In this document: positions 3,964 through 48,526 of the stretch, piece by piece | How positions within the stretch are numbered: the stretch's first letter is position 1 | Layout: every line of letters begins with the position of its first letter | Virus record (IMG/VR): IMGVR_UViG_3300005056_000001 | Span: 62,001 to 126,000 of that record | Length of the DNA stretch: 64,000 nt | Strand: one strand, 5' to 3' | Notes under the pieces: generated by a model | The model's input: only the letters and a program-made list of their open reading frames with translations | Told to the model about the DNA's origin: nothing | Databases searched by the model: none | Program-made: the position numbers and the translations under genes

Positions 3964-4986
3964 TTAGATGTTAATTTTTGCTGTTGGGTGTGTTAGCTGT
4001 ATTTTTAGGTGTGTTAGGTTTGGTGTTAGGCTGTTGTTCTCTAAACCTAAAAACTCTAGATTAGCCAAACTATCAACGTTTGGCGGAGTCGTTAATTGAT
4101 TGCCGTCTAGATATAACCACTTTAAACTTACCAATCCTTCAAGTATTGGTGGCGCAGTTAATTGATTGTCGTCTAAGTGCAAATGTCTTAACATGACCAA
4201 GCCTTCAAGTATCGGTGAAATTGTTAGTCTATTGTGGTTCAGGAATAACCGATCCAACTTTATCAAACCTTCAAGTATTGGTGGGTGATTCAGCTTGTTG
4301 TCCTCTAAATCCAACCTCTCCAAATTGACTAGACCATCAAGTATCGGTGGACGGCTCAAACTGTTGGTTGTTAAATCCAAACGCTTCAACTGTATCAAAC
4401 CTCCAAGTATTGGAGGTTCTATTAGTCGATTGTAGCTCAGATCTAAAGCCTCTAACCTGTACAATCCATTAAGAACAGGCGGGAGTGTTAGTTTGTTGTG
4501 GTTAATGTACACATGCTCTAGATTGACCAACCCCCCAAGAATGGGCGGTGTCGTTAATTTGTTGTTGGTCAAGCTTAATTTCTTCAGCTTGACCAAGCCC
4601 TCGAGGCTTGGTGGTGTAGTTAATCTGTTGTTGCTTAACACCAACCTCTTTAGGTTTACCAAACCGTTAAGAATAGGCGATGTCGATGAGGTTAGTTTAT
4701 TGTTGCTCAGATATAACTGTTCCAAATTAACCAATCCATCAAGAATTACTATGTGCTTTAGGTTGTTGTTTAAGTATAAACGCTTCAGTCTGAAAACTTG
4801 CTCAATCTTACAAAATATATCATCCGTGGCTTTAACCTTGTCATTACACAGTAGGAATTTATAGGTGTCGAGTATGTTCGGAAACACACTCAACACATCC
4901 ACGTTCCCGTTGCGAAAATTAGCCATTGCAAGATCTATATTTACATCGTCGCCTGATACTAGGAGTTGTTTTATTTTATTGTTCAT
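3964..4986 (-). CDS. LRR protein, family A (12 modules)
   Basis: Start reset to the ATG at 4986 (MNNKIKQLL), just after the upstream stop; same caps; ends THPTAKINI. Confidence 0.95.
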   Translation of the reverse strand: MNNKIKQLLVSGDDVNIDLAMANFRNGNVDVLSVFPNILDTYKFLLCNDKVKATDDIFCKIEQVFRLKRLYLNNNLKHIVILDGLVNLEQLYLSNNKLTSSTSPILNGLVNLKRLVLSNNRLTTPPSLEGLVKLKKLSLTNNKLTTPPILGGLVNLEHVYINHNKLTLPPVLNGLYRLEALDLSYNRLIEPPILGGLIQLKRLDLTTNSLSRPPILDGLVNLERLDLEDNKLNHPPILEGLIKLDRLFLNHNRLTISPILEGLVMLRHLHLDDNQLTAPPILEGLVSLKWLYLDGNQLTTPPNVDSLANLEFLGLENNSLTPNLTHLKIQLTHPTAKINI

Positions 4987-4990
4987 TCTT

Positions 4991-5845
4991 TTAATCTTCC
5001 TTAAGGCTATACAAATCAAAAAATTTCACAAAATCAGCACAGTCCTCATTCGTTTTAAATTTTATTTCGGCTCCATTATTCGAGGCAAAAAATCGAATCG
5101 ACTTGACACAACTCTCCTTGTTTTCTAGCTTATAGGTCTGTATTACCATACTATCCCCGCTATTTTTTGGAATATCGGCATATAGTTCCGATATCACAGG
5201 AATCCCTGTCTCATACAGACTCAAGGCCCTAAGCAAGGCACGCAGTCTCCAACAACCGCTACTCTCTAGGGTGCTTTGATAAGTCCAAAGAGAATAAAGC
5301 CATACATCGGTTTTCAATGATTTACCTTTGATGTTCATTCTTTTTTGACTGTGTAAGACAGACTTTAAGTCTTCCTTGCACTTATGTACGCCGCTATCAA
5401 AAAGACCTTGTCCGTTTAATTGTTGGACATACACAGGAAGCAATTCGGTGGACAGATCCCTCATATTCACAAGCGTTGACTTTGTGTCACTGTCAATATT
5501 TAAATCAAGGTTATACGCATGGTTTAAGTATCTTGTGTATCTGTCAATGATGTCATAGACACGACACATGTGTATAATTTCCAAACGCTCGGACAGTTTA
5601 GAAAAATTATATTCCAAGACATCCTCCCTGTCGGAAACATCGTCACCCTTGATCCAAAATTTTTCGGGCGGGCAATTGTACTTGTGGAGCTCCATTAGTT
5701 GGTCAATATACTTTCTGTGGGCATCATTGGACTCGTTCAGCCCGTCCAAGTCGGCCTGAAGAATTGCCAAATATTCACGGTCTGACTTTGAGAAAATTGA
5801 TTTTTCTTCTAATTCAACATTTAAGATGTCGTTTAATAATGTCAT
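4991..5845 (-). CDS. hypothetical protein (284 aa)
   Basis: Long ORF. The C-terminus SIRFFASNNGAEIKF..DCADFVKFF resembles ends of proteins I recall beside methylase-helicase genes (unverified). Confidence 0.7.
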   Translation of the reverse strand: MTLLNDILNVELEEKSIFSKSDREYLAILQADLDGLNESNDAHRKYIDQLMELHKYNCPPEKFWIKGDDVSDREDVLEYNFSKLSERLEIIHMCRVYDIIDRYTRYLNHAYNLDLNIDSDTKSTLVNMRDLSTELLPVYVQQLNGQGLFDSGVHKCKEDLKSVLHSQKRMNIKGKSLKTDVWLYSLWTYQSTLESSGCWRLRALLRALSLYETGIPVISELYADIPKNSGDSMVIQTYKLENKESCVKSIRFFASNNGAEIKFKTNEDCADFVKFFDLYSLKED

Positions 5846-6216
5846 TATTTTTTGTTTTGTGTTGATTCGAAATATGCCATATAAACCGCCTCTTGTTCTC
5901 TGAACGAGGAGTCTTTTAATTTATGGAAAAAGTTTTGGACACGTGTTTCGTGTTGGTTCCGTTTCCATGCCTCGATCTCGGTGTCAGATTCTAGCCTATA
6001 GAATGTTGGGTGCCATCCGTCGCCTCCAATTTGTTTGAATGTGATGGTGTTTTTATGCTCGGTGGGCGTTTCTATACGGTTTATTCTCTCGCCTGCCTTT
6101 GTGATTGCCTGAGTTTTGGTGACACGGTCAATTACATGCTTTTTGATGAATCCGCTTTTTGTTGTTTCGTAAAGAACCTCTCCAAGTTCTAGTATATGTC
6201 TCTTGATTGTGGGCAT
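5845..6216 (-). CDS. hypothetical protein (123 aa)
   Basis: ORF downstream of the promoter repeat; stop overlaps the next start. Confidence 0.75.
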   Translation of the reverse strand: MPTIKRHILELGEVLYETTKSGFIKKHVIDRVTKTQAITKAGERINRIETPTEHKNTITFKQIGGDGWHPTFYRLESDTEIEAWKRNQHETRVQNFFHKLKDSSFREQEAVYMAYFESTQNKK

Positions 6217-6235
6217 TATATGATTTTATATTAAT

Positions 6236-6381
6236 TTGATAGCACTAAGGTATGGAATAACATTCAAAAAACAAAATCGTTTTGTGGGAAATGTTGGTTT
6301 TAACGTTTTGTTAACGTTTTTTTGGTGGCTTTAGAGGGCTTTGTTGTGAACCCATCTTATTCCTTGATGGTGTATTGTGGG
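6236..6381 (-). repeat. about 145-bp direct repeat, copy 1 (promoter module)
   Basis: Near-identical to 6885-7029; contains TTAACGTTTTGTTAAC and, on the minus strand, TACCTTAGTGCTATCA. Confidence 0.95.
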
Positions 6382-6457: not shown

Positions 6458-6865
6458 CTAAAAATTGATATAAAATCCTCCTATAGTTTGGATATGCATA
6501 TCGCCTGAACAGCTAGAATTAAGGTAGTAGCCCTCGGACAGCAGTTCGTTAAAGTAGTCCGTATCCAATGTCTCACCGTCAATAAGTTCCAATAGCTCTA
6601 GTAGTTCCTCTTCGGTTTCTCTTATAATATAGTGTGTATCGTCCCCTGATTCAAACGTCGCCTGAAAACCTTCCCTACTCCATGTTTTAGAATACCCCAA
6701 GTAGGTTATAATTAAATCTTTTTCGGCGGTCTCTGTCTTGAAATCTCTCTGAAATCTCCTAATGTCACATCCCGAAAGGTTTTCATAATTAACCATTTTC
6801 ATATTAGTTTTATGGTCTAACCAAGTATTCCTGTAGTTTTTAAGAGTTGTTTTTATTGTAGTCAT
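6458..6865 (-). CDS. hypothetical protein (135 aa) flanked by direct repeats
   Basis: ORF bracketed by the two 145-bp repeats. Confidence 0.75.
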   Translation of the reverse strand: MTTIKTTLKNYRNTWLDHKTNMKMVNYENLSGCDIRRFQRDFKTETAEKDLIITYLGYSKTWSREGFQATFESGDDTHYIIRETEEELLELLELIDGETLDTDYFNELLSEGYYLNSSCSGDMHIQTIGGFYINF

Positions 6866-6884
6866 TATCTTGATTTATGATTAG

Positions 6885-7029
6885 TTGATAGCACTAAGGT
6901 ATGGAATAACATTAAATAAACAAAATCGTTTTGTGGAAAATATTGGCTTTAACGTTTTGTTAACGTTTTTGGTGGGTGGCTTTAGAGGGCTTTGTTGTGA
7001 ACACATCTTCCTTGATGGTGTATTGTGGG
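6885..7029 (-). repeat. about 145-bp direct repeat, copy 2 (promoter module)
   Basis: Near-identical to 6236-6381. Confidence 0.95.
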
Positions 7030-7030: not shown

Positions 7031-7972
7031 TTAAATGACGATCTCTGCCGTGGGATGTGTTGGTGGGATGGTTAATTGGTTGTTTTTCAAGTTTAAATAC
7101 CTCAACTTAACCAACCCATCAAGATTGGGAGATGTTGCTAACAGATTGTTTTTTAAATCTATAAACTCCAAGTTGATTAGCGAATCAAGGTTTGGGGGAG
7201 AACTTAATTTGTTGTTTCTCAAAAATAACATCTCCAACTTAACCAAGTCTTCAAGATTCGGTGGGGTCGTTAGTTGGTTGACTCCCAAATTCAAACGCTC
7301 CAAGGTAACCAAACCGTTTAGTGTTGGTGTTTTGGTTAGTTGGTTATGGCTAAGGTATAAAATCTTTAAATTTACCAACCCTGAAGTGTTCGGGGTAATC
7401 GTCAATTGGTTATTGTCCAAGTTTAAATATTCCAACTTAACCAATCCTTCAAGATTTGGTGGGGCTGTCAGTTGATTAATCTTCAAGTTTAAATATTCCA
7501 AGTTTATCAAGCCTTCAAGTATTGGCGGTTTTGTCAAATCATTGTCCTCCAAATTTAAATACTCTAACCGATACAAATTAACCAAACCCTCAAGATTTGG
7601 AGCAATCGTTAATTTATTATTGGTCAAATTTAAAACCCTTAAGCTGACTAGACCTTTTAGTATTGGCGGGGTGGTTAAGTGGTTGTTATACAAAAATAAC
7701 AGCGTCAGGTTCACTAACCCTTCGAGTATTGGCGGGGTTGTTAGTTGCATATTGTCTAAAGATAGTGTTTTTATTTTAAACACCTGCTCAACCTTACAAA
7801 ACAAGTCGTCAGACACATTTACTTTGTTGTGACTTACCAAAAAATCATATGTGTCAAGTATCCTAGGAAAAATACTCAACACATCAACATTCCCGTTACG
7901 AAAATTAGCCATTGCGAGTTCTATGTTTGCATCGTCGCCTGTGGTTAGTAGTTGTTTTATTTGGTTGTGCAT
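7031..7972 (-). CDS. LRR protein, family A (11 modules)
   Basis: MHNQIKQLLTTGDDANIELAMANFRNGNVDVLSIFP cap; 22-aa repeats; ends THPTAEIVI. Confidence 0.95.
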   Translation of the reverse strand: MHNQIKQLLTTGDDANIELAMANFRNGNVDVLSIFPRILDTYDFLVSHNKVNVSDDLFCKVEQVFKIKTLSLDNMQLTTPPILEGLVNLTLLFLYNNHLTTPPILKGLVSLRVLNLTNNKLTIAPNLEGLVNLYRLEYLNLEDNDLTKPPILEGLINLEYLNLKINQLTAPPNLEGLVKLEYLNLDNNQLTITPNTSGLVNLKILYLSHNQLTKTPTLNGLVTLERLNLGVNQLTTPPNLEDLVKLEMLFLRNNKLSSPPNLDSLINLEFIDLKNNLLATSPNLDGLVKLRYLNLKNNQLTIPPTHPTAEIVI

Positions 7973-8001
7973 TGTTTTTTGTTGTTTTGTGTCGCCGTGG
8001 A

Positions 8002-9000
8002 TTAAATATCAATATGTGCCGTAGGGTGTGTTGGTGTACTTGTTAGTTGGTTGTTCTCTAAATCTAAACGATCCAAATTAACTAAAGTATCAATGATTGG
8101 TGATGTCGTCAGTCGGTTGTTGTATAAGTACAAAGCTCTTAGATTGGTCAATAATTTAAGATTAGGTGGTGTAGTTAATTGGTTATCGCCCAAATCCAAC
8201 CACATCAACCCTACCAAACCTTCAATAATTGTTGTGTTGGTTAATCGGTTACAATTCAAATACAAACAAGTCAAGTTAATTACCCCCCTAAGATCAGGAG
8301 AGCTCGTCAATACGTTACTGCTCAAATCTAACCACACTAGGTTAACCAATCCTTCAAGAATTAGTGGTGTCGTCAGTCGGTTCTCGCTCAAATCCAAACG
8401 CTTCAATTTTGCTAAATTCATAAGCTTTGGTGGTGTCGTTAATCGGTTTCTGCCTAGGGTTAAACGCTCCAAATTCACTAACGTATTAAGTGTTGGTGAA
8501 TCTGTTAGTTTGTTACTGCCTAAGTTTAAACCCTTTAAATTAACCAATCCATCAACTATTGGCGGATTAGTCAGTTGGTTATTGGTCAAATATAGAACCT
8601 CTAACCTTACCAACTTATCAAGAATCGGCGAAGTGGTTAACTTGTTATTATTCAAGTATAACCGCTTTAAATTAACCAACCCTTCAAGTATTGGCGGATT
8701 CGTTAATTGGTTCTTCCCCAAGTCCAAAACCTCCAAATTAATCAATCCCTCAAGTATTGGCGGACTAGTTAGTCGGTTACTAACTAAACTTAATCGTTTC
8801 AATCTAAAAACCTGCTCAACCTTAGAAAATAAGTCATCCGTGGATTTTACCTTGGCGTGCCATAGCAAGAATTTATACGTGTCAAATATCCTAGGAAAAA
8901 TACTCAACACATCAACATTCCCATTACGAAAATTAGCCATTGCGAGTTCTATGTTTACATCGTCGCCCGTGGTTAGTAGTTGTTTTATTTGGTTGTGCAT
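8002..9000 (-). CDS. LRR protein, family A (12 modules)
   Basis: First ~125 nt nearly identical to those of the 7031-7972 gene; ends THPTAHIDI. Confidence 0.95.
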   Translation of the reverse strand: MHNQIKQLLTTGDDVNIELAMANFRNGNVDVLSIFPRIFDTYKFLLWHAKVKSTDDLFSKVEQVFRLKRLSLVSNRLTSPPILEGLINLEVLDLGKNQLTNPPILEGLVNLKRLYLNNNKLTTSPILDKLVRLEVLYLTNNQLTNPPIVDGLVNLKGLNLGSNKLTDSPTLNTLVNLERLTLGRNRLTTPPKLMNLAKLKRLDLSENRLTTPLILEGLVNLVWLDLSSNVLTSSPDLRGVINLTCLYLNCNRLTNTTIIEGLVGLMWLDLGDNQLTTPPNLKLLTNLRALYLYNNRLTTSPIIDTLVNLDRLDLENNQLTSTPTHPTAHIDI

Positions 9001-9022
9001 TGTTTTTATTATTTTTGATTTG

Positions 9023-11658: not shown

Positions 11659-12498
11659 TTAAAAAATGACTGTGACATCAGGAAGCAATTTTTGAATCCT
11701 GTCCTGTTCGTCAATGGAAAGGTGACACTCATGAAGGATTAGTCTTGTTAATTTTTTCAATTCCTTGATACTGTTGGGAATTGTGTTTATGGGATTATGA
11801 CTAAGATCCAAAATTTCAAGTGATTCTAGGCCCGATATCGCCTGTGGTATTTCTTTGATGCCATTACCCGACAAATCAAGCAGCTCCAATGATTTTAGCC
11901 CACACAGGCAATTAGGAATAACATTAATATTGTTAGACCCTAGCTCAAGTGCCGCAAGATTGACAAGCTTTTCTATCCCTGAAGGAACAAGCTTTAGGTT
12001 GTTGTGAGATAAACGAATATCTGCCAAGTTTACACAGTCGTATAGCTCAACAGGAAACTCCTCGAATTTATTTCGACTTAGGTCAATCTCCTCCAACCAA
12101 CACAGCGCACTCAAGTCAGGAAGGCTTGCGAGCTTATTTCTTTGTGCCAATAATGTCCTTAGTCCTCCAAACATATTCAACCCATGAGGGAAAGAATCAA
12201 GTCCGCACCTGCTCACGTCCAAACCTTCTTGCTTTCTCAACACATCATAAGAGAGTCCTGTAATCTCGGACAGTTCCCTGTGTTTGTATGCACTTGATAC
12301 ATTTTCGGGATAGACATAATAATCAACCTCCTTTAAATTTGTTGGGTGGTGTATAACAACCTTTCCGTCATACTCGCACAGCTTCCCTATGATATGACTG
12401 CCGTCTTTTAGGTATGCCAATACATTGTCTCCAAAAATAACATTCCATGTGTTACTTTTGTTTAGTACGGGCACGTGTATTTCTATTTTTGCTTTCAT
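11659..12498 (-). CDS. LRR protein, family B (23-aa repeats) with distinct N-terminal domain
   Basis: LxxLxLxxNxxxxxP repeats after a ~95-aa domain shared with the adjacent gene. Confidence 0.9.
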   Translation of the reverse strand: MKAKIEIHVPVLNKSNTWNVIFGDNVLAYLKDGSHIIGKLCEYDGKVVIHHPTNLKEVDYYVYPENVSSAYKHRELSEITGLSYDVLRKQEGLDVSRCGLDSFPHGLNMFGGLRTLLAQRNKLASLPDLSALCWLEEIDLSRNKFEEFPVELYDCVNLADIRLSHNNLKLVPSGIEKLVNLAALELGSNNINVIPNCLCGLKSLELLDLSGNGIKEIPQAISGLESLEILDLSHNPINTIPNSIKELKKLTRLILHECHLSIDEQDRIQKLLPDVTVIF

Positions 12499-12516: not shown

Positions 12517-13314
12517 TTAAAAATGCACATGAACACTCGGCAACATTTTTTTTATTCGAATAAGTTCGTCGTTCGAAATATTTGTGTGTTCTAGATACAA
12601 ATTCTCTAGCTTATGCAAATTTTTGATACTGTCGGGGAGTGTTGTGAGGGGATTACCACACAAATCCAAGTATACCAAAGACTCTAGGTAGCCAATGCTC
12701 TTAGGAATCTTAACAAGCTTATTATGTCCCAAATCAAGATCCGTCAATTGTTTTAGGTTGCCTATTGACTCAGGCAAAACCTCAAGGACGTTATTGCTCA
12801 AATTTAAATCCTCTAGGTTGTTAATATCACCAATAGAGTCGGGTAATTTTTTTATCTTGTTGCGTTGGAGGTTTAGGCTTGTCAGATCCTTTAGACCCAT
12901 TTCCTCGGGCAAGGTTTCTATGTTGTTATTGGTGACACCAAGATTCCGTAGCCCCTCTAGGTCACAAACACCGTCAGGCAGGCACGTGAGATTTTTGTTA
13001 TGCAAAAACACATCATGTGGTCTTTGTTTGATGTCGGTCATTGTTCTTTGGGTGGCAGACAGTAATTCTTTAAGTTGGAATGCCTCATCAATGTTGTTTA
13101 ATTCGACATAATAAACCACCTCATCCCAATGTGTTGGCGTTCCGACCTTGTCGGTGTCGTTATTTGGAACCAACTCTCCCAATACCGTTTCGCCCTCCTT
13201 GAGGAAGCATATAACATTGGTGTCAAGCGGAAAGTTATAGTCGCCATTGCTTATTATGACAGGTTTTTTGAATTCTATTTCAAGGTTTACCCTGAATGTT
13301 TGCGGATTTTCCAT
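12517..13314 (-). CDS. LRR protein, family B, paralog of 11659-12498
   Basis: Start reset to the ATG at 13314 (MENPQ); shared N-domain (N.ICFLKEG..LG.L..PT..EV.YYV) followed by LPDSIGxL repeats. Confidence 0.9.
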   Translation of the reverse strand: MENPQTFRVNLEIEFKKPVIISNGDYNFPLDTNVICFLKEGETVLGELVPNNDTDKVGTPTHWDEVVYYVELNNIDEAFQLKELLSATQRTMTDIKQRPHDVFLHNKNLTCLPDGVCDLEGLRNLGVTNNNIETLPEEMGLKDLTSLNLQRNKIKKLPDSIGDINNLEDLNLSNNVLEVLPESIGNLKQLTDLDLGHNKLVKIPKSIGYLESLVYLDLCGNPLTTLPDSIKNLHKLENLYLEHTNISNDELIRIKKMLPSVHVHF

Positions 13315-13447
13315 ATTTTGTTTTATATTTTTTTTTTGTATGATTACAAATATAAACAAAAAATCCGTACCAAAGAATTTTGATACGGATTTTAATATAA
13401 AAATGTTTTTTGTGTGGGTTGGTAAAATTGGCAACGAAGGCTTTTAA

Positions 13448-13654
13448 TTAACCAACAACTTCGATTTCCCTGATTTTATCGTCTTTAATAGGAGCCCAAT
13501 AGCTGTCCCACATCAAGTATATATCATCACCTTCAAAGCCTATAATTTCCGCCCTGTATCGGATATGATCACTAAAACCTGCCCAAAAATCAATCACGTC
13601 ACCTTCATTGAATTTTTTGTGAGATTTCGATAGGGTTTTTGCGAATTCAATCAC
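13448..13654 (-). CDS. hypothetical protein (68 aa)
   Basis: Start overlaps the upstream stop. Confidence 0.65.
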   Translation of the reverse strand: MIEFAKTLSKSHKKFNEGDVIDFWAGFSDHIRYRAEIIGFEGDDIYLMWDSYWAPIKDDKIREIEVVG

Positions 13655-14487
13655 CTTTGACTTGGGCGACCTCCAACATAATCGCTATTACTATACCTAT
13701 CAACCAAATCTATAAATAAACCCCTCTCTAACGCTTCACCAAAATTCTTTTTAGCCATCATCTTAGGATCAATAATCTCAAGCGTATAGAAGTCGTTTGA
13801 ATGAAACCTAACACCCACATTGTTTGTTGTATCTTTGTTGTTTCCTGACCACCTAGATGTTGCACTAGGGAATCTATACAAGTCCTTGGCTAAATATAAA
13901 TTTTGACTCAACGGGTCTCTTTGTTTTAAAAAGTCGTCATCATCTGTGTATCGGTCAAATATATAGGACGCTGTTCGTTGTAGCTGAAAGTTGACCAAGC
14001 CTCTAATTACAAGCCAATTAGTCCATTTTTTCGGACGACCATTTAATGGCTTGTATGTTCCTAGAATAGAAAACACACGTTCAGTTTTAAAAAAGCTCAC
14101 GGTTGCTTTCATCATTTCTTCACCAATTTGAAGATCAATAACCTCCCCATCCGAGGCACCATCAACCAAGTCGTTGAAGGCGTTCACAAAGGACGCAATG
14201 GAGTCATACTCCCAATTCATGTTGTTGCACACCTTTAAATCGTCTCGGTTTCTATCGTCTTGGTCGTGGAAACGTATGGTGCTGCCTGTTCCTCGTGTTC
14301 CTGCATCGGTGACGTCGCTCACTACCACAGAACCTCCCCGATTTTTGTCTCTTTTTAATTCAAATCGCTGTCCGTTGTGTACCATAAATTCAAGGGTGTC
14401 TATCACACTGTCTATGTGACAAAAATTCATTTTAACCTTGTTTAAATTCTCGTCGTATGCCCCGTTGGGTATGTTTTTTAAGTTCAT
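13651..14487 (-). CDS. paralog family P member 1 (278 aa), unknown function
   Basis: MNLKNIPNGAYD..LNK start; LVIRGLVNFQLQ; FYTLEIIDPK plus a unique tail. Confidence 0.85.
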   Translation of the reverse strand: MNLKNIPNGAYDENLNKVKMNFCHIDSVIDTLEFMVHNGQRFELKRDKNRGGSVVVSDVTDAGTRGTGSTIRFHDQDDRNRDDLKVCNNMNWEYDSIASFVNAFNDLVDGASDGEVIDLQIGEEMMKATVSFFKTERVFSILGTYKPLNGRPKKWTNWLVIRGLVNFQLQRTASYIFDRYTDDDDFLKQRDPLSQNLYLAKDLYRFPSATSRWSGNNKDTTNNVGVRFHSNDFYTLEIIDPKMMAKKNFGEALERGLFIDLVDRYSNSDYVGGRPSQR

Positions 14488-14526
14488 GTTTTTGTGTTAT
14501 TTCTTTGTTTAGTGTTGCTTTTTGGT

Positions 14527-15243: not shown

Positions 15244-15264
15244 ATTTTGTTATGATTTGGTTGG

Positions 15265-16090: not shown

Positions 16091-16095
16091 CTAGT

Positions 16096-37452: not shown

Positions 37453-37511
37453 TTTTATGGGTTGGACTAAAAACCGTGCTTGGTGTTATTAAATAATCAA
37501 AAAATAATATA

Positions 37512-38198
37512 ATGAAAACAACGAACAAAATAAATACTACCATTCTAAAATTACTTACATCAGGAAGTCGCAAAGACATAGATCATGCAATGTCAGTGTT
37601 TCGTGATGAAGATGTGGATGTGTTATGCATGTTCCCAAAAATAGTTGACACGTTCGAATTTCTGCTAGGTCATGGCAAGGTAAACCCCACGGACGATTTG
37701 CTTTTTAAGGCCGAGCAGGTCTTTAGGGTGGAGGGTTTATATTTAGTGAATAAACAATTGACGAGTCCCCCAATACTTGATGGTTTGGTGAATCTAGATT
37801 CGCTATTTTTATCGAATAATCAATTGACGATTCCTCCAATACTTGACGGGTTAGTAAACCTAACATATTTAGGGTTAGAGAACAATCAATTGACGATTCC
37901 CCCAATACTTCATGGGTTAAATAACTTGATATATTTATATCTAGAGAACAACCAACTAACCACACCACCGATTTTTGACGGTTTAGTGAACCTAAAATCT
38001 TTATGGTTGAATAATAACCAACTAGCTAACACTCCATCACTCGAAGGGTTGGTAAAGTTGGAGTTTTTGCATTTAAGCGACAATAAACTAAAAACACCGC
38101 CAAATCTTGATGGCTTGGTCAAGTTACAGGAGATATACTTAAGCCGCAATCCACTAGGTAACCCACCAACCCACAAAAGCGCAGTAATTCATATTTAA
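37512..38198 (+). CDS. LRR protein, family A (7 modules)
   Basis: Cap LKLLTSGSRKDIDHAM..DVLCMFP; ends THKSAVIHI. Confidence 0.95.
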   Translation: MKTTNKINTTILKLLTSGSRKDIDHAMSVFRDEDVDVLCMFPKIVDTFEFLLGHGKVNPTDDLLFKAEQVFRVEGLYLVNKQLTSPPILDGLVNLDSLFLSNNQLTIPPILDGLVNLTYLGLENNQLTIPPILHGLNNLIYLYLENNQLTTPPIFDGLVNLKSLWLNNNQLANTPSLEGLVKLEFLHLSDNKLKTPPNLDGLVKLQEIYLSRNPLGNPPTHKSAVIHI

Positions 38199-38201: not shown

Positions 38202-38284
38202 AAGTGTTAAAATTTTGTTAAAATATCCATTATTCTTTGATGGTGTCTAAATAAACACGTACTTGGTGTTATTAAATAATCAAA
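38202..38284 (+). repeat. 83-bp direct repeat, copy 1 (promoter module)
   Basis: Near-identical to 40319-40401; its 3' part (CTTGGTGTTATTAAATAATCAAA) also precedes the gene at 37512. Confidence 0.95.
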
Positions 38285-38295
38285 TAGTAAATATC

Positions 38296-39050
38296 ATGAA
38301 AACTCGGAAAGAAATCGGCGAATCCATCATTATTGAATTACTTACACTAGGAAATCGTGATGATATAACCCGTGCAATGGATATATTTCGTAATGGAAAA
38401 GTGAATATATTAAGTATGTTCCCGAAAATACTCGACACCTTTGAGCTTCTGCTAAGCCATAACAAGGTAAACCCCACAGACGATTTGTTTTCAAAGACCG
38501 AGCAGGTATTTAGGTTGGAGTATTTATACTTGAACTACATTCAACTAACGACCCACCAATACTTGATGGTTTGGTAAACCTACAGGATCTTTATCTGAAC
38601 AACAACCAACTAACCACACCTCCAATACTTGATGGATTGGTAAACATAAGGTTGTTAGACCTAGAGTACAACCAATTAACCACACCACCGAATCTTAAAT
38701 CTTTGATAAACTTGGAGTTTTTAGAACTGAACGACAACCAACTAACGACACTACCGAATCTTGAAGGTTTATTAAAGTTAAAGAGGTTAGACTTGGACTA
38801 CAACCAATTAACGAACCCGCCACTGCTTAATGGTTTGGTAAATCTAAGACAGCTATTGTTGGGCGACAACCAATTGACTACACCGCCAATACTCGAAGGT
38901 TTGGTAAGGTTAGAGCATTTGGATTTAGATAATAACCAATTAATCACACCGCCGAATCTTGACGGATTACTCGATTTACAGGATGTGTATTTGAGCGGTA
39001 ACCAATTTACCACTCCACCAAGCCACCCACACGCCGAAATACGCATTTAA
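38296..39050 (+). pseudogene. LRR gene, family A, split by a 1-bp deletion (8 modules when rejoined)
   Basis: ACG ACC CAC CAA at 38548-38559 versus the consensus ACC CCA CCA: one C is missing from a C-run at 38552-38554. This joins ORFs 38296-38577 and 38571-39050. Confidence 0.85.
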
Positions 39051-39073: not shown

Positions 39074-39649
39074 ATGAAAAATCAAAAACATATACTAGAA
39101 ATATATAATTTTTTACTCAATTATGGAGAAGTCAAGCCAACAGACGACCTGTCCGCCAAGGTCGAAGAGCTCGAAAAAATAACAATTTTGGACTTGAGAT
39201 ATAGAAAATTGACTAGTATACCAAGCCTAGAGGCATTGGTGAATTTAGAACTCTTGGATTTGGACAATAACGACCTGACCGATCCTCCAATACTCAAGGG
39301 CTTGGTAAATCTAAAGCAGTTGTATTTGGGCCATAACCAACTTGAAACCCCTCCAAATCTTGAAGGATTGGTAAAATTAAATGTTTTAGCCTTAAACGAC
39401 AACCAACTAACAACCCCACCAAACCTAGAAGGGTTATCAATACTGAACGTTTTATATTTAGACAACAATAAACTGATGACGACACCCAATCTTGATGGGC
39501 TGTCAAACCTAGAGCGTGTACATTTAAACGGTAATCACCTAAGCACACCACCGAACCTAGAAGGCTTAAACAGATTAACATGGGCACGTTTTGAGAACAA
39601 CCCACTAACAACCCCACCAACACACCCAACAGCGACAATTGATATTTAA
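39074..39649 (+). CDS. LRR protein, family A, short-cap type (7 modules)
   Basis: Begins at the ILE.Y.FLL..G.VK.TDDL part of the cap; ends THPTATIDI. Confidence 0.95.
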   Translation: MKNQKHILEIYNFLLNYGEVKPTDDLSAKVEELEKITILDLRYRKLTSIPSLEALVNLELLDLDNNDLTDPPILKGLVNLKQLYLGHNQLETPPNLEGLVKLNVLALNDNQLTTPPNLEGLSILNVLYLDNNKLMTTPNLDGLSNLERVHLNGNHLSTPPNLEGLNRLTWARFENNPLTTPPTHPTATIDI

Positions 39650-39672: not shown

Positions 39673-40320
39673 ATGGTTACAAAAAAAAGCATACTAGAAA
39701 CATACGATTTTCTTCTTAAACACGACAAGGTCAAAGCAACAGTCGATGTGTCTGCCAAGATTAAGGAAGTCAAAAAAATCGTTGTGTTAGAGTTGGGTTC
39801 TGAAGAGTTGACCAACATACCGAGCCTTGCAGGCTTGGTTAATTTGTTGATTTTAGATTTGGGCTGTAACGAACTCACCACACTTCCGAGTCTAGAAGGA
39901 TTGGTAAAATTGGAGATTTTAGATTTAGCCAACAACAAAATAACTACACCGCCAATACTAGAAGGATTGGTAAGATTAAGCACCTTATTCTTGGACAACA
40001 ACGATCTAAACACACCGCCAAATCTTGAAGGCTTAATTAGATTGGAGACCTTGCACCTGAGCTCTAATAAACTAAAAACACCACCAAATCTTGAAGGCTT
40101 AATTAGATTGGAGACCTTGCACCTGAGCTCTAATAAACTAAAAACACCACCCAATCTTAAGGGTGTGCCGATTCTAGTAATGTTGGTATTAAACGACAAC
40201 AAATTAACAACTCCGCCAAACCTTGAAGGATTGTCCAATTTGAGAGATGTATACTTATACAACAACCCACTAACAAGCATACCAACCCACCCAACCGCAT
40301 CAATTAATATTGAAGATTAA
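39673..40320 (+). CDS. LRR protein, family A, short-cap type (8 modules)
   Basis: Contains a perfect 66-bp duplication; ends THPTASINIED. Confidence 0.95.
   Translation: MVTKKSILETYDFLLKHDKVKATVDVSAKIKEVKKIVVLELGSEELTNIPSLAGLVNLLILDLGCNELTTLPSLEGLVKLEILDLANNKITTPPILEGLVRLSTLFLDNNDLNTPPNLEGLIRLETLHLSSNKLKTPPNLEGLIRLETLHLSSNKLKTPPNLKGVPILVMLVLNDNKLTTPPNLEGLSNLRDVYLYNNPLTSIPTHPTASINIED
40018..40149 (+). repeat. perfect 2 x 66-bp tandem duplication of one LRR module
   Basis: 40018-40083 is identical to 40084-40149. Confidence 0.97.
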
Positions 40321-40401
40321 GTGTTAATATTTTGTTAAAATTGTCATTATTCTTTGATGGTGTCTAAATAAACACGTACTTGGTGTTATTAAATAATCAA
40401 A
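40319..40401 (+). repeat. 83-bp direct repeat, copy 2 (promoter module)
   Basis: Near-identical to 38202-38284. Confidence 0.95.
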
Positions 40402-40412
40402 CGGTAATTATC

Positions 40413-40850
40413 ATGAAATCGCAAAAAATAAAAGTCAACGGTATTGTTGTCCTAGAATTAGAATCGCCTCCGAAAATAGGTACCTATTACCTAAATTTCA
40501 GAGAAAGTGGAGACTTTAATTATACCATAAAGGTTGTGTCAAGCCAAACACAGATTAGTATTGTTTGTGCGTCTCGTCATGACATAACCAAGAAAATCTT
40601 CAGTGTGGAAGACATTATCCGAAAATGTTGTAGAGCAGACCTAGCCAACAACGAATTGGACTATGCAAAAATAACACAAAGCTTTTGGTTTTGGGATGTT
40701 TTTGATTATTGGCTTTTGGGCATAAAGACGTCTAGAATCTTCACGGTCACAAAGGAGAACTTTGATGATGAGGTAAATTTCTTCGTCTCCGACACGACTA
40801 GTTCCATGATCTTGTCATGTACAGACACCATTAAACGTAGCTACAAGTAA
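40413..40850 (+). CDS. hypothetical protein
   Basis: Start reset to ATG 40413 after the repeat. Confidence 0.7.
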   Translation: MKSQKIKVNGIVVLELESPPKIGTYYLNFRESGDFNYTIKVVSSQTQISIVCASRHDITKKIFSVEDIIRKCCRADLANNELDYAKITQSFWFWDVFDYWLLGIKTSRIFTVTKENFDDEVNFFVSDTTSSMILSCTDTIKRSYK

Positions 40851-44330: not shown

Positions 44331-45422
44331 ATGGAAACCAACACAAAAACACCGACAGTAACAGTAAACCTAGACAGCAGCGAAATGTCAAATGTTATCC
44401 TGCACAAGGTAGGAAACAAGTCAATGGACGAGGGAATGCGTATTGCAACAAACGAGCTAAAAATGACCGATGGTCTGAATGAGTCGTTGTTTAGCTATTT
44501 TGTAGGAGGATTTAAATTCGACACATTGTATGAGTTTACGGATGAGCACGACCTTTCTATGAATTCGGTATTCAAGATTTGCAAGAGAATCTTTGAAGAA
44601 ACAGACAAGGAACAAAATTTTTACAAAGGCTCTATTGATATCCTTAGACACCTCTATGATATGTCAAACAATCCCACCATTAAAGGAGGCGATCTGTATG
44701 TTGCATATTTCAATAATTGCGACTGTGACGGTGAATCGACTGATGCTATCGGAATTTTCAAGGCCGACAAGCGTGTCAATTTTGTTAATCCGAAATTTGA
44801 CGAGGACGAGAATGAATGGGCCGTGGATATTCGTGAGGGATTCGACATGACAAAAATCGACAAGGGTTGTATTATCTTCAACACCCAAGCCGAAACAGGA
44901 TATCGTATTGCCAACATCAAACTAAAAGGATTAATGGCAAGTGCATGGAATTTGGATTTCATGAACATTTCCCGTGTACAGGACGATTCTTACCAAACAC
45001 AGGTCTACATGGATATGTGCAAAGATTTTGCCAACAAGGCCTACAAAGAAGACAACAAAGACGTAAAGGTTGACTTCCTGAATCGTACCAAGGATTATTT
45101 CGAAAACTACAAAGAACATACCGACGAGGATTTCAAGGAAGTGGTGTTCGAGGACTCTGAAAAGAAAGAAGCCTTTGCGGAGCATGTCACCGAGACACGT
45201 GACAGCCTAGAACTTGAGGACGAAGACAACGGCGAATTCTTGATCTGTGCCAACACGGTAAAGAAGGCCAAAAAAGGATTCAAAAACAATATTCTGCTAG
45301 ACACCGAGGTGGAGATTAAAATCTTGTCTTCACAGGCGGTTTCTGATGGGTATGTTGAGCGTGGACACGACGACGAAAAGGACATGGACTTCTACAAGGT
45401 TTATTTTAACAGCGAGAAATAG
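44331..45422 (+). CDS. nucleoid-associated protein (37-kDa NdpA/YejK-like, Bacteroidota type)
   Basis: ILHKVGNK, LYDMSNNPTIKGGDLYVAYF, AIGIFK.D, IDKGCIIFN, W..DF, I.LD..IEIKI..ERGHDDEK..FYKVYF. Confidence 0.85.
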   Translation: METNTKTPTVTVNLDSSEMSNVILHKVGNKSMDEGMRIATNELKMTDGLNESLFSYFVGGFKFDTLYEFTDEHDLSMNSVFKICKRIFEETDKEQNFYKGSIDILRHLYDMSNNPTIKGGDLYVAYFNNCDCDGESTDAIGIFKADKRVNFVNPKFDEDENEWAVDIREGFDMTKIDKGCIIFNTQAETGYRIANIKLKGLMASAWNLDFMNISRVQDDSYQTQVYMDMCKDFANKAYKEDNKDVKVDFLNRTKDYFENYKEHTDEDFKEVVFEDSEKKEAFAEHVTETRDSLELEDEDNGEFLICANTVKKAKKGFKNNILLDTEVEIKILSSQAVSDGYVERGHDDEKDMDFYKVYFNSEK

Positions 45423-45821: not shown

Positions 45822-46367
45822 ATGGAAAAACTAAAAATGTCCGACATATCAAAACCGCTAGATTTTAATGTCGGCTCTGTCCAATGTTTGGCACACCATG
45901 GCTCAAAACTCCTCTCGGGTCGTTACGATTTCGATTTTAATGTTTATTTACCCACAAGGGAAATGAATCTACAGCGTGAATTGGTTTGGACAGATCACCA
46001 AAAAAGTGAATTTATTAAGTCTATAATAAAAGGCATAAAGATACCACCGTTTTGTCTGATAGAAAATACCCACGAGGATGGGACTTCGTACTATGAGGTA
46101 ATCGACGGCAAACAACGCCTGAGTACCTACATTTCATTCATTAAAGGAGAATTTAATATAATGAACAATGGTATTGAATACTCAATAGATGGCTTGGACA
46201 GTAAAACATGCAATCGTGTGGAACAATGGGGAATACATGCACACATCGCATTTAGCGACCCCGAAAACAGAATCACAGACGATCAAAAAATCGCATGGTT
46301 TAGGCTAATTAATTACACCTCGACTCCACAGGAGGACATTCATCTACAGAACCTCGAAAAACAGTAG
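45822..46367 (+). CDS. stand-alone DUF262 domain protein
   Basis: LQRELVWTDHQKSEFIKSIIKG..IPPF..VIDGKQRLST. Confidence 0.88.
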   Translation: MEKLKMSDISKPLDFNVGSVQCLAHHGSKLLSGRYDFDFNVYLPTREMNLQRELVWTDHQKSEFIKSIIKGIKIPPFCLIENTHEDGTSYYEVIDGKQRLSTYISFIKGEFNIMNNGIEYSIDGLDSKTCNRVEQWGIHAHIAFSDPENRITDDQKIAWFRLINYTSTPQEDIHLQNLEKQ

Positions 46368-46399: not shown

Positions 46400-46624
46400 A
46401 TGAAAAAGCTAAAAAAGGAGTTTATTGCAAAGTTAAAAAGTATTTCTATACCCGACGATGAACCCGACACATATGATTTGTTGTGGGGTGTTATTGACGA
46501 GCTCCCAAATTGTTTTGCCAAGGGTTATTTGGAGGCCCTGTTTCAGGCAGACAGTGACGAGAACGGATTGAAAGGATTAAAAAGTCGCATGTTGGACTGT
46601 GCCAAGACAAAGATATGGAAGTAA
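46400..46624 (+). CDS. hypothetical protein
   Basis: ATG 46400 (or GTG 46367). Confidence 0.65.
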   Translation: MKKLKKEFIAKLKSISIPDDEPDTYDLLWGVIDELPNCFAKGYLEALFQADSDENGLKGLKSRMLDCAKTKIWK

Positions 46625-46727
46625 TTGTTGGAACAATTGAGAATATATGCATATTGTTTTGTTGATGTGAGATTTTATGATTACATTGTGTGACTGTTAA
46701 TAACGAAATCAAGAAGTATTGAATAAT

Positions 46728-47462
46728 ATGAACGATAAAATTAAGCAATTGCTTGCATCAGGCGACGATGCAAATATAGAACTTGCAATGGCTAATTTTC
46801 GTAACGGGAATGTGGATGTACTGAGTGTTTTCCCGAATATACTGAAGACGTTCGAACTTTTGCTTTTTCACTGTATGGTTGACCATACAGATGACTTGCT
46901 TTTTAAGGTTGAGCAGGTGTTTAACATTAAGCAGTTATACTTGGATAACTTCCAACTAATTAGTCCGCCAATACTAGAAGGTTTGGTTAGGTTGGAGCGT
47001 TTGGATTTACGAAACAACCAACTGACCCAAACACCAAATCTTGAAGGATTGTTTAGGTTGGAGTGTTTGGATTTACAAAATAACCAACTGACAACCCCAC
47101 CAAATATAAAAGGATTGGTAAATTTAGAGTATTTATACCTGTGTGACAACCGACTGAAAAAGCCGCAAAACATTAAAGGATTGGTAAATTTGGAGTGGTT
47201 GTATTTGGGTAATAACCAATTGACTACTCCACCAATACTTGATGGTTTAGTAAAGCTGAAGGTATTAGATTTGAATCATAACAATTTAATCACTCCACCA
47301 ATGCTAGATGGTTTAGTAAAGCTGAAGGCATTATTTTTGGAGAATAACCAACTAACAAAACCGCTAAGTATAAAGGGATTGGTAGAACTGAAATTTTTAC
47401 ATTTACAGAACAACCCACTCAAAACAAAACCATCCCACCCAACAGCCGAAATATACATTTAA
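46728..47462 (+). CDS. LRR protein, family A (8 modules)
   Basis: MNDKIKQLLASGDDANIELAMANFRNGNVDVLSVFP; ends SHPTAEIYI. Confidence 0.95.
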   Translation: MNDKIKQLLASGDDANIELAMANFRNGNVDVLSVFPNILKTFELLLFHCMVDHTDDLLFKVEQVFNIKQLYLDNFQLISPPILEGLVRLERLDLRNNQLTQTPNLEGLFRLECLDLQNNQLTTPPNIKGLVNLEYLYLCDNRLKKPQNIKGLVNLEWLYLGNNQLTTPPILDGLVKLKVLDLNHNNLITPPMLDGLVKLKALFLENNQLTKPLSIKGLVELKFLHLQNNPLKTKPSHPTAEIYI

Positions 47463-47483
47463 AATACCAAAAAATACAATAAC

Positions 47484-48526
47484 ATGAAACCTCAAAAAAC
47501 AATCAACATACTAAATACCTACGAATTCCTACTAAAGCACGGCAAGGTCAAAGCAACAGACGATTTGTCTGTTAAGATAAAAGTACTCGAAATGGTCGTG
47601 TCGTTAGATTTAGCCTCTAAGCAGCTAACACTCATACCGTGTCTTGAGGGTTTGGTGAACTTGGTACGTTTAGACCTTAGCTACAACCAACTGACCACTC
47701 CGCCAATACTCAAAGGTTTGTGTGGCTTGAAGGTTTTACTTTTGCATAATAATCAATTGACTACGGCACCAAATCTTGAAGGTGTTGTAAGGTTAGAGTG
47801 GTTACACTTGAGTGATAATCAACTGACCTCACCACCAAACCTTGAAGGCTTGGTGAAGTTGGAGCTGTTATACTTAGACGACAATCAATTAACTGCGCCA
47901 CCAATACTTGAAGGATTGGTAAATTTAAAGTGGTTATATCTAGACGGCAATCAATTAACTACTCCGCCAATGCTTAATGGTTTGGTAAATTTGGAGCGAT
48001 TACATCTAGACGGCAATCAATTAACAACTCCGCCAATACTTAATGGATTGGTAAATTTGGAGCTGTTATACTTAGACGGCAATCAATTAACTGCGCCACC
48101 AATGGTTTGGTAAATTTGGAGCGATTACATCTAGACGGCAATCAATTAACAACTCCGCCAATACTTAATGTTTTGGTAAATTTAGAGCGATTGAAATTAA
48201 ACAGTAACAGCCTAGACAAAACACCAAATCTAGAAGGTTTAGTAAACTTGGCTTTTTTGGATCTCGGTCACAACAAATTGACGTTACAGCCAATACTAGA
48301 AGGTTTGGTTTACTTGAGAGGTTTAAGTTTGTGTCACAACCAACTAACAACCCCACCAATCCTTAAAGGTTTGGTTAATTTGGAGCGTTTATACCTGAGT
48401 CACAACAGACTAGACAGATCACCAACGCTCGATGGATTGTTGAAATTGAAGTGGTTAGACCTAGGCAACAACCCACTTAAGACAAAAACAAAACCATCCC
48501 ACCCAACAGCAGAAATTAACATTTAA
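47484..48526 (+). pseudogene. LRR gene, family A, short-cap type, split by a 7-bp deletion (14 modules when rejoined)
   Basis: CCAATGGT at 48099-48106 versus the consensus CCAATACTTAATGGT; joins ORFs 47484-48113 and 48107-48526. Confidence 0.88.

What the first reader, a model, noticed from the sequence alone, without database searches (positions are those of the whole stretch)
4081..47969. A 98-bp two-module LRR tract is shared between inverted genes 44 kb apart
Seen: the reverse complement of 4081-4178 equals 47872-47969 except at 2 positions (GGTAAG/GGTAAA and AACGAC/AACTAC). It encodes LDDNQLTAPPILEGLV(S/N)LKWLYLDGNQLTTP in both genes, whereas the flanking modules and N-caps of the two genes are clearly divergent. 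Inference: recent ectopic gene conversion or cassette copying between distant LRR loci, so the dispersed genes behave as one exchanging pool of modules. This is the strongest mechanistic evidence for the repertoire idea.
Basis: partly seen in the sequence, partly recalled or inferred. Interest (0 to 1): 0.88.

Follow-up and report, generated by a model that had tools for sequence, protein, structure and literature searches.

The report
Copied LRR patch between phage paralogs
Two otherwise divergent leucine-rich-repeat genes lying 44 kb apart in a huge phage genome share a 98-base stretch that is almost certainly a recently copied patch (gene conversion), an ordinary process in gene families but a clean example in an unusual, LRR-rich phage.

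Summary
The reverse complement of 4081-4178 matches 47872-47969 at 96 of 98 bases, in the same codon frame and the same repeat phase. Both flanks fall to about 55-65% identity.

It is not chance, not a general property of the modules and not protein-level selection:
- Among 3,007 same-phase two-unit comparisons between different genes, the mean is 58/98 and the best unrelated pair is 74/98.
- 29 of 30 degenerate codons are identical, against 45% in the family background.

The window is part of a 368-kb IMG/VR contig. The contig looks like a huge phage distantly related to the PAU/PTm1 jumbo phages. It carries ten genes of this 22-residue LRR family and seven of a second LRR family.

The best explanation is a short non-reciprocal copy, by gene conversion or template switching, from the B-type array (47484-48526) into gene A (3964-4986).

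This is the only long inter-locus tract in the LRR arrays. The other recent events are local: two within-gene unit duplications and two end tracts between adjacent genes.

No related genome or reads were available, so assembly cannot be checked directly. I rate it a new member of a known kind, of moderate interest.

The parts
4081..4178 (-). Copy of the shared tract in gene A. It covers units 10-11 of 12 and is the inferred recipient copy.
   Evidence: 96/98 identical to 47872-47969. Apart from their tract partners, the nearest relatives of A.10 and A.11 are mostly units of gene B and never units of gene A.
47872..47969 (+). Copy of the shared tract in gene B, covering units 5-6. It is the inferred donor-type copy and sits inside a sub-array of similar units.
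   Evidence: Ba.5 and Ba.6 are 79-88% identical to Ba.7 and Bb.1. The 22-24 nt sub-blocks of the tract recur in Ba.7, Ba.8 and Bb.1.
3964..4986 (-). Gene A. It is a 340-aa LRR protein with a long helical N-cap, 12 units of 22 aa, and a C-terminal THPTAxIxI tail.
   Evidence: ORF list and translation. Pfam LRR_4 and LRR_8. AF2 model with pLDDT 91.
47484..48526 (+). Gene B. It is an LRR gene with a short N-cap, read as two ORFs (47484-48113 and 48107-48526) because one unit is 7 nt short near 48100.
   Evidence: Unit spacing is 59 instead of 66 nt at 48042 to 48101.
47976..48170 (+). Exact 70-nt direct repeat inside B (47976-48045 and 48101-48170). The period is 125 nt, which is 2 units minus 7. 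This very recent internal duplication/deletion creates the frameshift.
40018..40151 (+). Exact 68-nt tandem duplicate with a 66-nt period inside g8 (39673-40320). It is an in-frame unit duplication.
7838..7989 (-). The 5' end of g3. It is near-identical to the 5' end of the adjacent g4 (8866-9017): 140/152 overall and about 96% from -9 to +125. Identity then drops to about 68%. This is a second mosaic tract.
48485..48533 (+). The 3' end of B, covering the C-cap, the stop codon and a few bases beyond. It is 90% identical to the 3' end of the adjacent g9 (47421-47469).
   Evidence: (family D10).
3045..3911 (-). g1, a family member with a long N-cap.
7031..7972 (-). g3, a family member with a long N-cap.
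8002..9000 (-). g4, a family member with a long N-cap.
37512..38198 (+). g5, a family member with a long N-cap.
38263..39050 (+). g6, a family member read as two ORFs. A run of 3 C where the repeat consensus expects 4, near 38553, shifts the frame.
39074..39649 (+). g7, a family member with a short N-cap.
39673..40320 (+). g8, a family member with a short N-cap. It is B's closest N-cap relative, at 76% nt.
46725..47462 (+). g9, a family member with a long N-cap, adjacent to B.

Best explanation
The tract is a short non-reciprocal patch of about 98-99 nt (1.5 LRR units). It was copied recently from the B-type LRR array (47484-48526, + strand) into the paralogous gene A (3964-4986, - strand). 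The mechanism is either homologous recombination (gene conversion) or replication template switching, between copies of a huge-phage genome.

The 66-nt periodicity and the conserved repeat scaffold supply the short homologies. They also keep any in-register exchange in frame.

The effect is to replace, in A, the variable residues of the predicted binding-surface positions in units 10-11 with those of B.

Shown:
- the tract exists and is a statistical outlier;
- it is identical at synonymous sites;
- both flanks are divergent;
- its relatives do not match those of the rest of gene A.

Inferred:
- the mechanism (recombination versus template switch);
- the direction B to A;
- the assumption that the assembly is correct.
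For: (1) 96/98 identity against flanks of about 55-65%.

(2) Background. In 3,007 same-phase 98-nt comparisons between different genes the mean is 58.3 and the sd 5.0. The next value, 81, is the same tract shifted by one unit. The best unrelated pair is 74, so z is about 7.6. Over all diagonals, every other LRR-array match between genes is at most 76/98.

(3) 29 of 30 amino-acid-identical degenerate codons use the same codon. The family background is 0.446, giving a binomial P of 1.2e-9. Selection on the protein therefore cannot explain the identity.

(4) It is a patch, not a crossover. Upstream, A has the long N-cap of g3/g4/g9 and B has the short N-cap of g7/g8. Downstream, A's 3' end resembles its neighbour g1 (family D8, 80%) and B's resembles its neighbour g9 (90-93%).

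(5) Direction. Apart from their tract partners, A.10 and A.11 are mostly closest to units of B (Ba.7, Bb.1, Ba.6; 71-79%) and never to units of A. Within B the tract units have relatives at 79-88%, which are older than the 98% A-B identity.

(6) The family shows other recent repeat-level rearrangements, so the machinery is evidently active. These are exact 68-nt and 70-nt within-gene duplicates in g8 and B, and a 152-nt 5' tract between g3 and g4.

(7) The two copies differ at 2 bases and each has unique flanks. That is not what a collapsed repeat looks like.
Against: No reads, coverage or long reads were available, and no related genome exists in the collections searched. Neither the assembly nor the pre-conversion state of A could be checked.

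The flanks offer only short microhomology: a 14-nt identical block 18-31 nt upstream and a few bases downstream. Classical RecA-type conversion would therefore have had little homology to start from, which favours template switching or a phage annealing-type recombinase. Neither was identified.

The direction rests on a rough clock argument.
Confidence: 0.75

Rival explanations
1. Assembly artefact. The metagenome assembler created or misplaced the shared tract, through repeat collapse, a chimeric path or a mixture of strains.
For: The contig is a metagenome assembly (IMG/VR UViG_3300005056_000001). Gene B holds a 70-nt exact internal repeat and a frameshift exactly at a repeat junction. Gene g6 is shifted at a C homopolymer. 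So local assembly or sequencing errors in these arrays are plausible.
Against: The two copies differ at 2 bases and each has unique, divergent flanks on both sides. A collapsed repeat would be identical. Graph mis-traversal can only swap what follows a shared k-mer block, which would invert or mis-join the 44-kb segment. It cannot write B's sequence between A's two flanks unless junction k-mers exist in the reads. The longest exact shared blocks are only 51 and 36 nt.
Confidence: 0.1
2. The inverted 98-bp repeats are crossover sites of an inversion switch, either shufflon/Gin-Cin-like or flip-flop by general recombination. The switch would invert the 43.7-kb segment and exchange the 3' parts of A and B in frame.
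For: The two copies are inverted, in the same frame and the same repeat phase. They also straddle the point near 32 kb where transcription diverges and cumulative GC skew is lowest. An inversion would therefore preserve gene orientation on both arms and produce in-frame chimeras.
Against: Pfam scans of the ORFs of about 160 aa and more in the window, except two members of the 13651-17118 paralogue family, found no serine or tyrosine recombinase. Known invertase sites are about 26-34 bp and their segments are a few kb, from general knowledge. Inversion needs a pre-existing identical tract and does not explain how the identity arose. Each gene's 3' end resembles its own neighbour's, which does not help decide either way.
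Confidence: 0.04
3. Programmed cassette diversification. The family would be a repertoire in which modules are regularly copied between members, like lamprey VLR assembly or the vls/pilS/msp2 systems, possibly with frameshifted members as silent donors.
For: There are ten paralogues with hypervariable predicted binding-surface positions. There is one inter-locus tract, three other mosaic or duplicated tracts and two frameshifted members.
Against: Only one long inter-locus LRR tract exists among 45 gene pairs, and the other unit pairs are at most 82% identical. All members are complete genes with their own start, N-cap and C-cap, so there is no expression-site plus silent-cassette architecture. 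B's frameshift comes from an event younger than the transfer, since the 70-nt repeat is exact. No dedicated enzyme was seen in the window.
Confidence: 0.05
4. The identity is kept by selection on the protein or on a nucleic-acid element, or it is the product of a diversity-generating retroelement (a template-repeat/variable-repeat pair).
For: The tract lies near the C-terminal end of A, and one of the two differences is A (in B) to G (in A).
Against: Synonymous sites are identical (29/30 against a 45% background). Rfam gives no match. The second mismatch is T/G, which is not adenine-specific, and all the other adenines of the tract are unchanged. The Pfam scans of window ORFs found no reverse transcriptase.
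Confidence: 0.01

Closest known systems
Interlocus (ectopic) gene conversion in multigene families. Examples from general knowledge are the LRR regions of plant resistance-gene clusters, mosaic Listeria internalin genes and bacterial surface-protein paralogues.
   Same: A short tract of near-identity, including synonymous sites, sits inside otherwise divergent paralogues. Both flanks are divergent. The tract stays in frame and respects the repeat register. It replaces the variable residues of the predicted binding surface of LRR units.
   Different: Here the genome is a huge phage known only from a metagenome. The two genes are inverted and 44 kb apart. Only a single event of this kind is visible.
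Lamprey/hagfish VLR assembly and bacterial cassette-based antigenic variation (vls, pilE/pilS, msp2).
   Same: LRR modules, or cassettes, are copied by a gene-conversion-like, short-homology-guided process into a recipient gene.
   Different: There is no incomplete expression locus and no bank of silent partial cassettes. There is no evidence of frequent or programmed copying, and no dedicated enzyme was found. All ten members look like independent complete genes.
SDS22-like / internalin-type 22-residue LRR proteins (internalin A and F, Leptospira LIC11098 and LIC10831, SDS22).
   Same: 22-residue units with the LxxLxLxxNxL motif. Pfam LRR_4 and LRR_8 match. The predicted solenoid matches these structures with Foldseek E of 1e-11 to 1e-12 and TM of 0.6-0.75.
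   Different: The N-cap is a distinct 5-helix domain with no Pfam match. There is a conserved C-terminal THPTAxIxI tail. There is no Ig-like inter-repeat domain, and by inspection no signal peptide or wall anchor. Sequence identity is only 22-33%. No homologue of the caps appears among 5.8 billion proteins.
LRR paralogue expansions in giant viruses (Klosneuvirus, Hokovirus, Catovirus, entomopoxvirus).
   Same: They are the closest viral structural matches, and these viruses also carry many LRR paralogues per genome.
   Different: The window's non-LRR genes point to a phage. A 1,388-aa SbcCD-like fusion and a 463-aa protein have their only phage relatives in the jumbo phages PAU, PTm1/PTm5, pT24 and MA9V. 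Gene ends overlap in a prokaryotic way, and there are no Shine-Dalgarno sites.

Membership tests
Ectopic gene conversion tract | A segment with much higher identity than both flanks, beyond the family background | tested here: met
   96/98 against flanks of about 55-65%. Background mean is 58/98 and the best unrelated pair is 74/98, from n=3,007.
Ectopic gene conversion tract | Identity extends to synonymous sites, so it is not protein-level constraint | tested here: met
   29/30 identical codons against a 0.446 background, P=1.2e-9.
Ectopic gene conversion tract | The tract and the rest of the gene have discordant relationships | tested here: met
   A's N-cap groups with g4, g6, g1 and g5. 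B's groups with g8 and g7. The tract units of A are mostly nearest to B units and never to A units.
Ectopic gene conversion tract | Non-reciprocal: a patch bounded on both sides, with the donor unchanged | tested here: inconclusive
   Both flanks in A are unlike B, and each gene's 3' end resembles its own neighbour's. The pre-event state is not available.
Ectopic gene conversion tract | Confirmed in reads or in related genomes | not testable with these tools
   No close relatives in metagenome contigs (best 40% aa), in IMG/VR or in the protein database (best 37%). No reads are available.
Programmed cassette system (VLR / vls / pilS type) | One expression site plus a bank of incomplete silent cassettes | tested here: not met
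   All ten members have their own start codon, N-cap, array and C-cap.
Programmed cassette system (VLR / vls / pilS type) | Many mosaic tracts shared among members | tested here: not met
   There is one long inter-locus LRR tract. Other inter-gene LRR matches are at most 76/98.
Programmed cassette system (VLR / vls / pilS type) | Variation within a population at the recipient site | not testable with these tools
   No reads or sibling assemblies were found.
Diversity-generating retroelement | Template/variable repeat differences confined to adenines of the template, with a reverse transcriptase nearby | tested here: not met
   The mismatches are A/G and T/G, and all the other adenines are unchanged. 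No RT was found among the scanned ORFs.
Site-specific invertible segment (Gin/Cin/shufflon) | An adjacent invertase or shufflon recombinase, with short crossover sites | tested here: not met
   Pfam scans of window ORFs found no recombinase. The repeat is 98 bp and the segment 43.7 kb. The rest of the 368-kb contig was not examined.
SDS22-like / internalin-class LRR fold | 22-residue LxxLxLxxNxL units forming a curved solenoid | tested here: met
   Unit consensus and spacing, Pfam, AF2 pLDDT 91, Foldseek.
Internalin family proper | Signal peptide, internalin cap, Ig-like inter-repeat domain, surface anchor | tested here: not met
   The model ends about 25 residues after the last unit, with no Ig-like domain. 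The N-terminus is a polar helical cap, by inspection. No signal-peptide predictor was run.

The most novel reading that the evidence does not exclude
The huge phage keeps its LRR genes as an actively recombining module library. Inverted and tandem paralogues on both arms of a divergent replication/transcription unit would exchange 1-2 unit patches, and might flip the intervening 44 kb through the shared tract. Frameshifted members would act as silent donors. In this way the phage would rapidly evolve new intracellular binding specificities, for example against host defence proteins. This would be a viral analogue of VLR-like or antigenic-variation cassette systems.
Probability: 0.06. Interest if true: 0.8.

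Novelty: new member of a known kind. Interest (0 to 1): 0.4.

Why it matters
Gene conversion among repeat-protein paralogues is a textbook way of reshuffling binding surfaces, so the mechanism is not new.

The setting is worth noting. The genome is an uncultured 368-kb phage that carries at least 17 LRR genes in 64 kb. According to a review cited in PMC10945359 (its reference 47, Matsushima et al. [quoted passage not shown]

The ten family-I genes have caps with no homologue in 5.8 billion proteins, and their predicted binding-face positions are hypervariable. Traces of unit duplication and patch transfer suggest ongoing diversification of a phage-encoded binder family of unknown target.

If the tract is real, module-level exchange contributes to that diversification. 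The tract also gives a testable prediction: inversion isomers through the 98-bp inverted repeat.

Tried and rejected
- Related genomes, to see an unconverted A orthologue. Metagenome contigs with gene A gave 41 loci, the best at 40% aa and LRR-only, and did not even return the source contig. IMG/VR by protein, by family alignment and by a tract 35-mer returned only this contig and one giant-virus MAG at 39%. The 5.8-billion-protein search gave a best hit of 37% over the LRR part. The look-up of encoding contigs for the ligase found nothing on record.
- megablast of 25 kb of the window against phage records: no match.
- Selection instead of copying: rejected by codon identity.
- DGR: rejected by the mismatch pattern and the absence of an RT.
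- Invertase switch: no recombinase found in the window.
- Structured RNA: no Rfam match and no tRNA.
- PADLOC gave nothing for the LRR genes.
- Giant-virus origin was considered, because of the BFVD and GVMAG hits. The phage-specific homologies, the overlapping gene ends and the absence of SD sites argue against it.
- Literature searches for LRR gene conversion in phages and for LRR in jumbo phages gave no direct precedent.
- My first two regex attempts to call the units failed or were noisy. The units were then fixed by hand from the 22-aa spacing.

Full report
**1. The observation**

The reverse complement of window 4081-4178 and window 47872-47969 are identical at 96 of 98 positions.
- The two differences are at tract position 52 (G in the minus-strand gene, A in the plus-strand gene; Ser versus Asn) and at position 89 (G versus T; synonymous Thr).
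- One further base matches on the 3' side, so the tract is at most 99 nt.
- Immediately outside, identity falls to about 55-65%.
- Both copies are in the same reading frame and begin 13 nt into a 66-nt LRR unit. The tract spans the second half of one unit and about two-thirds of the next, roughly 1.5 modules.
- A degenerate 98-mer with up to three mismatches finds only these two sites, and none are expected in shuffles.
- A 35-mer from the tract occurs only twice in all of IMG/VR, both times in this contig.

**2. Is it more than the family background?**

The window holds ten genes of one LRR family, with 22-residue, 66-nt units.
- Minus strand: 3045-3911 (g1), 3964-4986 (A), 7031-7972 (g3), 8002-9000 (g4).
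- Plus strand: 37512-38198 (g5), 38263-39050 (g6, frameshifted), 39074-39649 (g7), 39673-40320 (g8), 46725-47462 (g9), 47484-48526 (B, frameshifted).
- Sources.

Three comparisons set the background.
- Units. Across 95 units, inter-gene identity averages 56% (sd 8%). Apart from the two tract pairs, the maximum is 82%.
- Same-phase windows. In 3,007 comparisons of 98 nt between different genes the mean is 58.3 matches (sd 5.0). The tract scores 96. The next value, 81, is the same tract offset by one unit. The best unrelated pair scores 74. That gives z of about 7.6.
- All diagonals. Every other match between LRR arrays of different genes is at most 76/98.

Protein-level selection cannot explain the tract either. 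Of 30 amino-acid-identical degenerate codons, 29 use the same codon. The family background is 44.6%, giving a binomial P of 1.2e-9.

**3. What the genes are**

Pfam finds LRR_4, LRR_8 and LRR_1 in A and B.

An AlphaFold2 model of A, built on the eight intact paralogues, is confident (mean pLDDT 91, pTM 0.89). It shows a five-helix N-terminal cap (residues 1-66), a 12-strand solenoid and a short C-terminal strand.

Foldseek gives only generic LRR relatives.
- PDB: designed LRRs, internalin A and F, Leptospira LIC11098 and LIC10831, SDS22 and SHOC2.
- Viral proteins: LRR proteins of giant viruses.

The family has two N-cap classes:
- long: g1, A, g3, g4, g5, g6, g9;
- short: g7, g8, B.

It also has a conserved C-terminal tail, THPTAxIxI. 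Neither cap has a homologue among 5.8 billion proteins. The best hits reach 37% identity and cover the LRR part only.

Within the unit, entropy is highest at positions 3, 7, 5, 8 and 2. These are the x positions of LxxLxLxxN, which in known LRR structures line the concave, ligand-binding face (general knowledge). The scaffold positions are nearly invariant.

By inspection there is no signal peptide, so these are probably intracellular binders of unknown target. That last point is an inference.

**4. Genomic setting**

The window is bases 62001-126000 of IMGVR_UViG_3300005056_000001, a contig of 368,109 bp.

Several features point to a huge phage distantly related to the PAU/PTm1 group.
- A 1,388-aa metallophosphoesterase-SbcC-like fusion (24700-28866, minus strand) matches phrog_35725 over its full length. 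At about 25% identity it matches the corresponding proteins of the jumbo phages PAU, PTm1/PTm5 and MA9V.
- A 463-aa protein (30307-31698) has its only phage relatives in PTm1/PTm5, pT24 and PAU.
- Other genes are an NAD-dependent ligase, a DNA methylase, two GmrSD_N/DUF262 proteins and a nucleoid-associated NA37 protein.
- Gene ends overlap by 1-8 nt. Only 4 of 58 starts have an SD-like motif, and the leaders are A-rich.

The leader pattern suggests a Bacteroidota-type host. That is an inference.

Genes run leftward up to about 31.7 kb and rightward from about 33 kb. Cumulative GC skew has its minimum there.

**5. How the tract most likely arose**

The evidence fits a non-reciprocal patch.
- Upstream of the tract, A carries the long N-cap and B the short one. 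Their shared core is 61% identical in nucleotides.
- Downstream, A's 3' end resembles that of its neighbour g1 (80% over 50 nt). B's resembles that of its neighbour g9 (90-93%).

So both sides of the tract in A are unlike B. That is the signature of gene conversion or a double template switch, not of a single crossover.

For direction, two facts point the same way.
- Apart from their tract partners, A.10 and A.11 are mostly closest to units of B (Ba.7, Bb.1 and Ba.6 at 71-79%) and never to units of A.
- Inside B the tract units sit in a sub-array of relatives at 79-88% identity. The 22-24-nt sub-blocks of the tract recur in that sub-array.

Those within-B duplications are more diverged than the A-B pair (98%). 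The tract type therefore existed in B before the transfer, and B, or a B-like allele, was the donor. This is an inference that rests on a rough clock.

Flanking homology is minimal: a 14-nt identical block 18-31 nt upstream and a few bases downstream. Template switching or a phage annealing-type recombination is therefore at least as likely as classical long-homology conversion. I could not tell these apart.

**6. Other recent events in the family**
- An exact 68-nt tandem unit duplication in g8 (40018/40084).
- An exact 70-nt repeat in B (47976/48101) with a period of 125 nt. One unit is therefore 7 nt short, which splits B into two ORFs.
- A 152-nt tract at the 5' ends of the adjacent genes g3 and g4. 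Identity is about 96% from -9 to +125 and about 68% after that.
- A 49-nt tract at the 3' ends of the adjacent genes g9 and B.
- A possible short tract between g6 and g9, 41/45.

So repeat-level rearrangement recurs. Apart from the A-B tract, all of it is local.

**7. Rivals**

Assembly artefact.
- The contig is a metagenome assembly, and two family members carry frameshifts at repeat or homopolymer sites. Local errors are therefore plausible.
- But the two tract copies differ at two bases and each has unique flanks on both sides.
- Graph mis-traversal at a shared block could swap what follows it, inverting the 44-kb segment. It could not write the tract between A's flanks without junction k-mers in the reads.
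- I give this 0.1.

Inversion switch.
- It fits the geometry: the repeats are inverted, in frame, and straddle the divergence point.
- No recombinase turned up in the Pfam scans, which covered the window ORFs of about 160 aa and more except two members of the 13651-17118 paralogue family.
- It also does not explain where the identity came from.

Retroelement (DGR).
- Excluded by the mismatch pattern and the absence of a reverse transcriptase.

Programmed cassette system.
- Not supported, because there is no expression-site plus silent-cassette architecture and only one inter-locus tract.

**8. Comparison with what is known, and novelty**

The process is ordinary ectopic gene conversion in a repeat-protein gene family. 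From general knowledge it is well known for LRR regions of plant resistance-gene clusters, internalins and bacterial surface-protein families.

It works like those cases and meets the sequence-level criteria I could test. Confirmation from reads or relatives was not possible.

It resembles VLR-type or vls-type cassette copying only in the elementary step.

The less ordinary part is the carrier: an uncultured huge phage with ten genes of an orphan-capped LRR family and seven of a second LRR family in 64 kb. A paper in the library notes, citing Matsushima et al. [quoted passage not shown] LRR domains are predicted in host-recognition proteins of a chimallivirus (bioRxiv 10.64898/2026.04.21.720040).

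**9. Verdict**

The conversion is accepted; the exchanging repertoire is not shown.
- It is a new member of a known kind.
- Interest is 0.4.

Noticed in passing
window 11659-12498, 12517-13434 (-) and 52410-53075, 53112-53804, 53902-54615, 54619-55320, 55313-56437 (+): A second, different LRR family with LRR_14/LRR_8 matches. Two of its members also match phrog_6688. Its seven genes lie on both arms, roughly mirror-symmetric about the divergence point near 32 kb. That makes at least 17 LRR genes in 64 kb of a phage genome.
   Followed up: partly
window 48042-48170: Gene B is split into two ORFs because one LRR unit is 7 nt short (59-nt spacing). The break is exactly at the junction of an exact 70-nt direct repeat with a 125-nt period. 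It could be a very recent illegitimate duplication/deletion that made a pseudogene, or an assembly error in a near-identical array.
   Followed up: partly
window 38545-38577: Gene g6 is frameshifted at a run of 3 C where the repeat consensus (ThrProPro) expects 4. In the shifted frame both g6 and B end with the same residues, because the conserved GLVN codons contain an out-of-frame TAA.
   Followed up: partly
window 31699-33029: A stretch of about 1.3 kb with no ORF of 100 aa or more lies where transcription diverges: leftward genes up to 31.7 kb, rightward genes from 33.0 kb. Cumulative GC skew has its minimum there. It is a candidate replication origin or a divergent early promoter region.
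   Followed up: no
window 13651-17118 (-): Four tandem paralogues (13651-14487, 14527-15243, 15265-15996, 16096-17118) with conserved 5' and 3' blocks. The two that were scanned have no Pfam match, and the one scanned against PHROGs has no match there.
   Followed up: no
window 5845-6216 / 6458-6865 with 6203-6358 / 6852-7009: Two small paralogous genes whose upstream regions are 87-90% identical over about 160 nt. This looks like a duplicated gene-plus-promoter cassette sitting between LRR genes.
   Followed up: no
window 38202-38310, 40319-40427, 37450-37507, 2329-2368: Intergenic segments next to LRR genes are repeated at 74-90% identity, and one is inverted on the other arm. They contain a conserved motif ending in GGTGTTATTAAATAATCAAA just upstream of the start codons. 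They are probably shared promoters or leaders of the family.
   Followed up: no
window 2411-3022 (-), 21764-22585 (+), 45822-46367 (+), 23890-24681 (-): Defence-like or anti-defence-like genes sit among the LRR genes. They are a small AAA_15/AriA-like ATPase, two GmrSD_N (DUF262) proteins and an N6/N4 DNA methylase.
   Followed up: partly
window 44331-45422 (+): A homologue of the bacterial 37-kDa nucleoid-associated protein (NA37/YejK family, E=1.5e-28) is encoded by the phage.
   Followed up: no
L003 (IMGVR_UViG_GVMAG-S-ERX556119-27_000001): The only other IMG/VR contig with a detectable relative of gene A is a giant-virus MAG, at 39% identity over the LRR part only.
   Followed up: no
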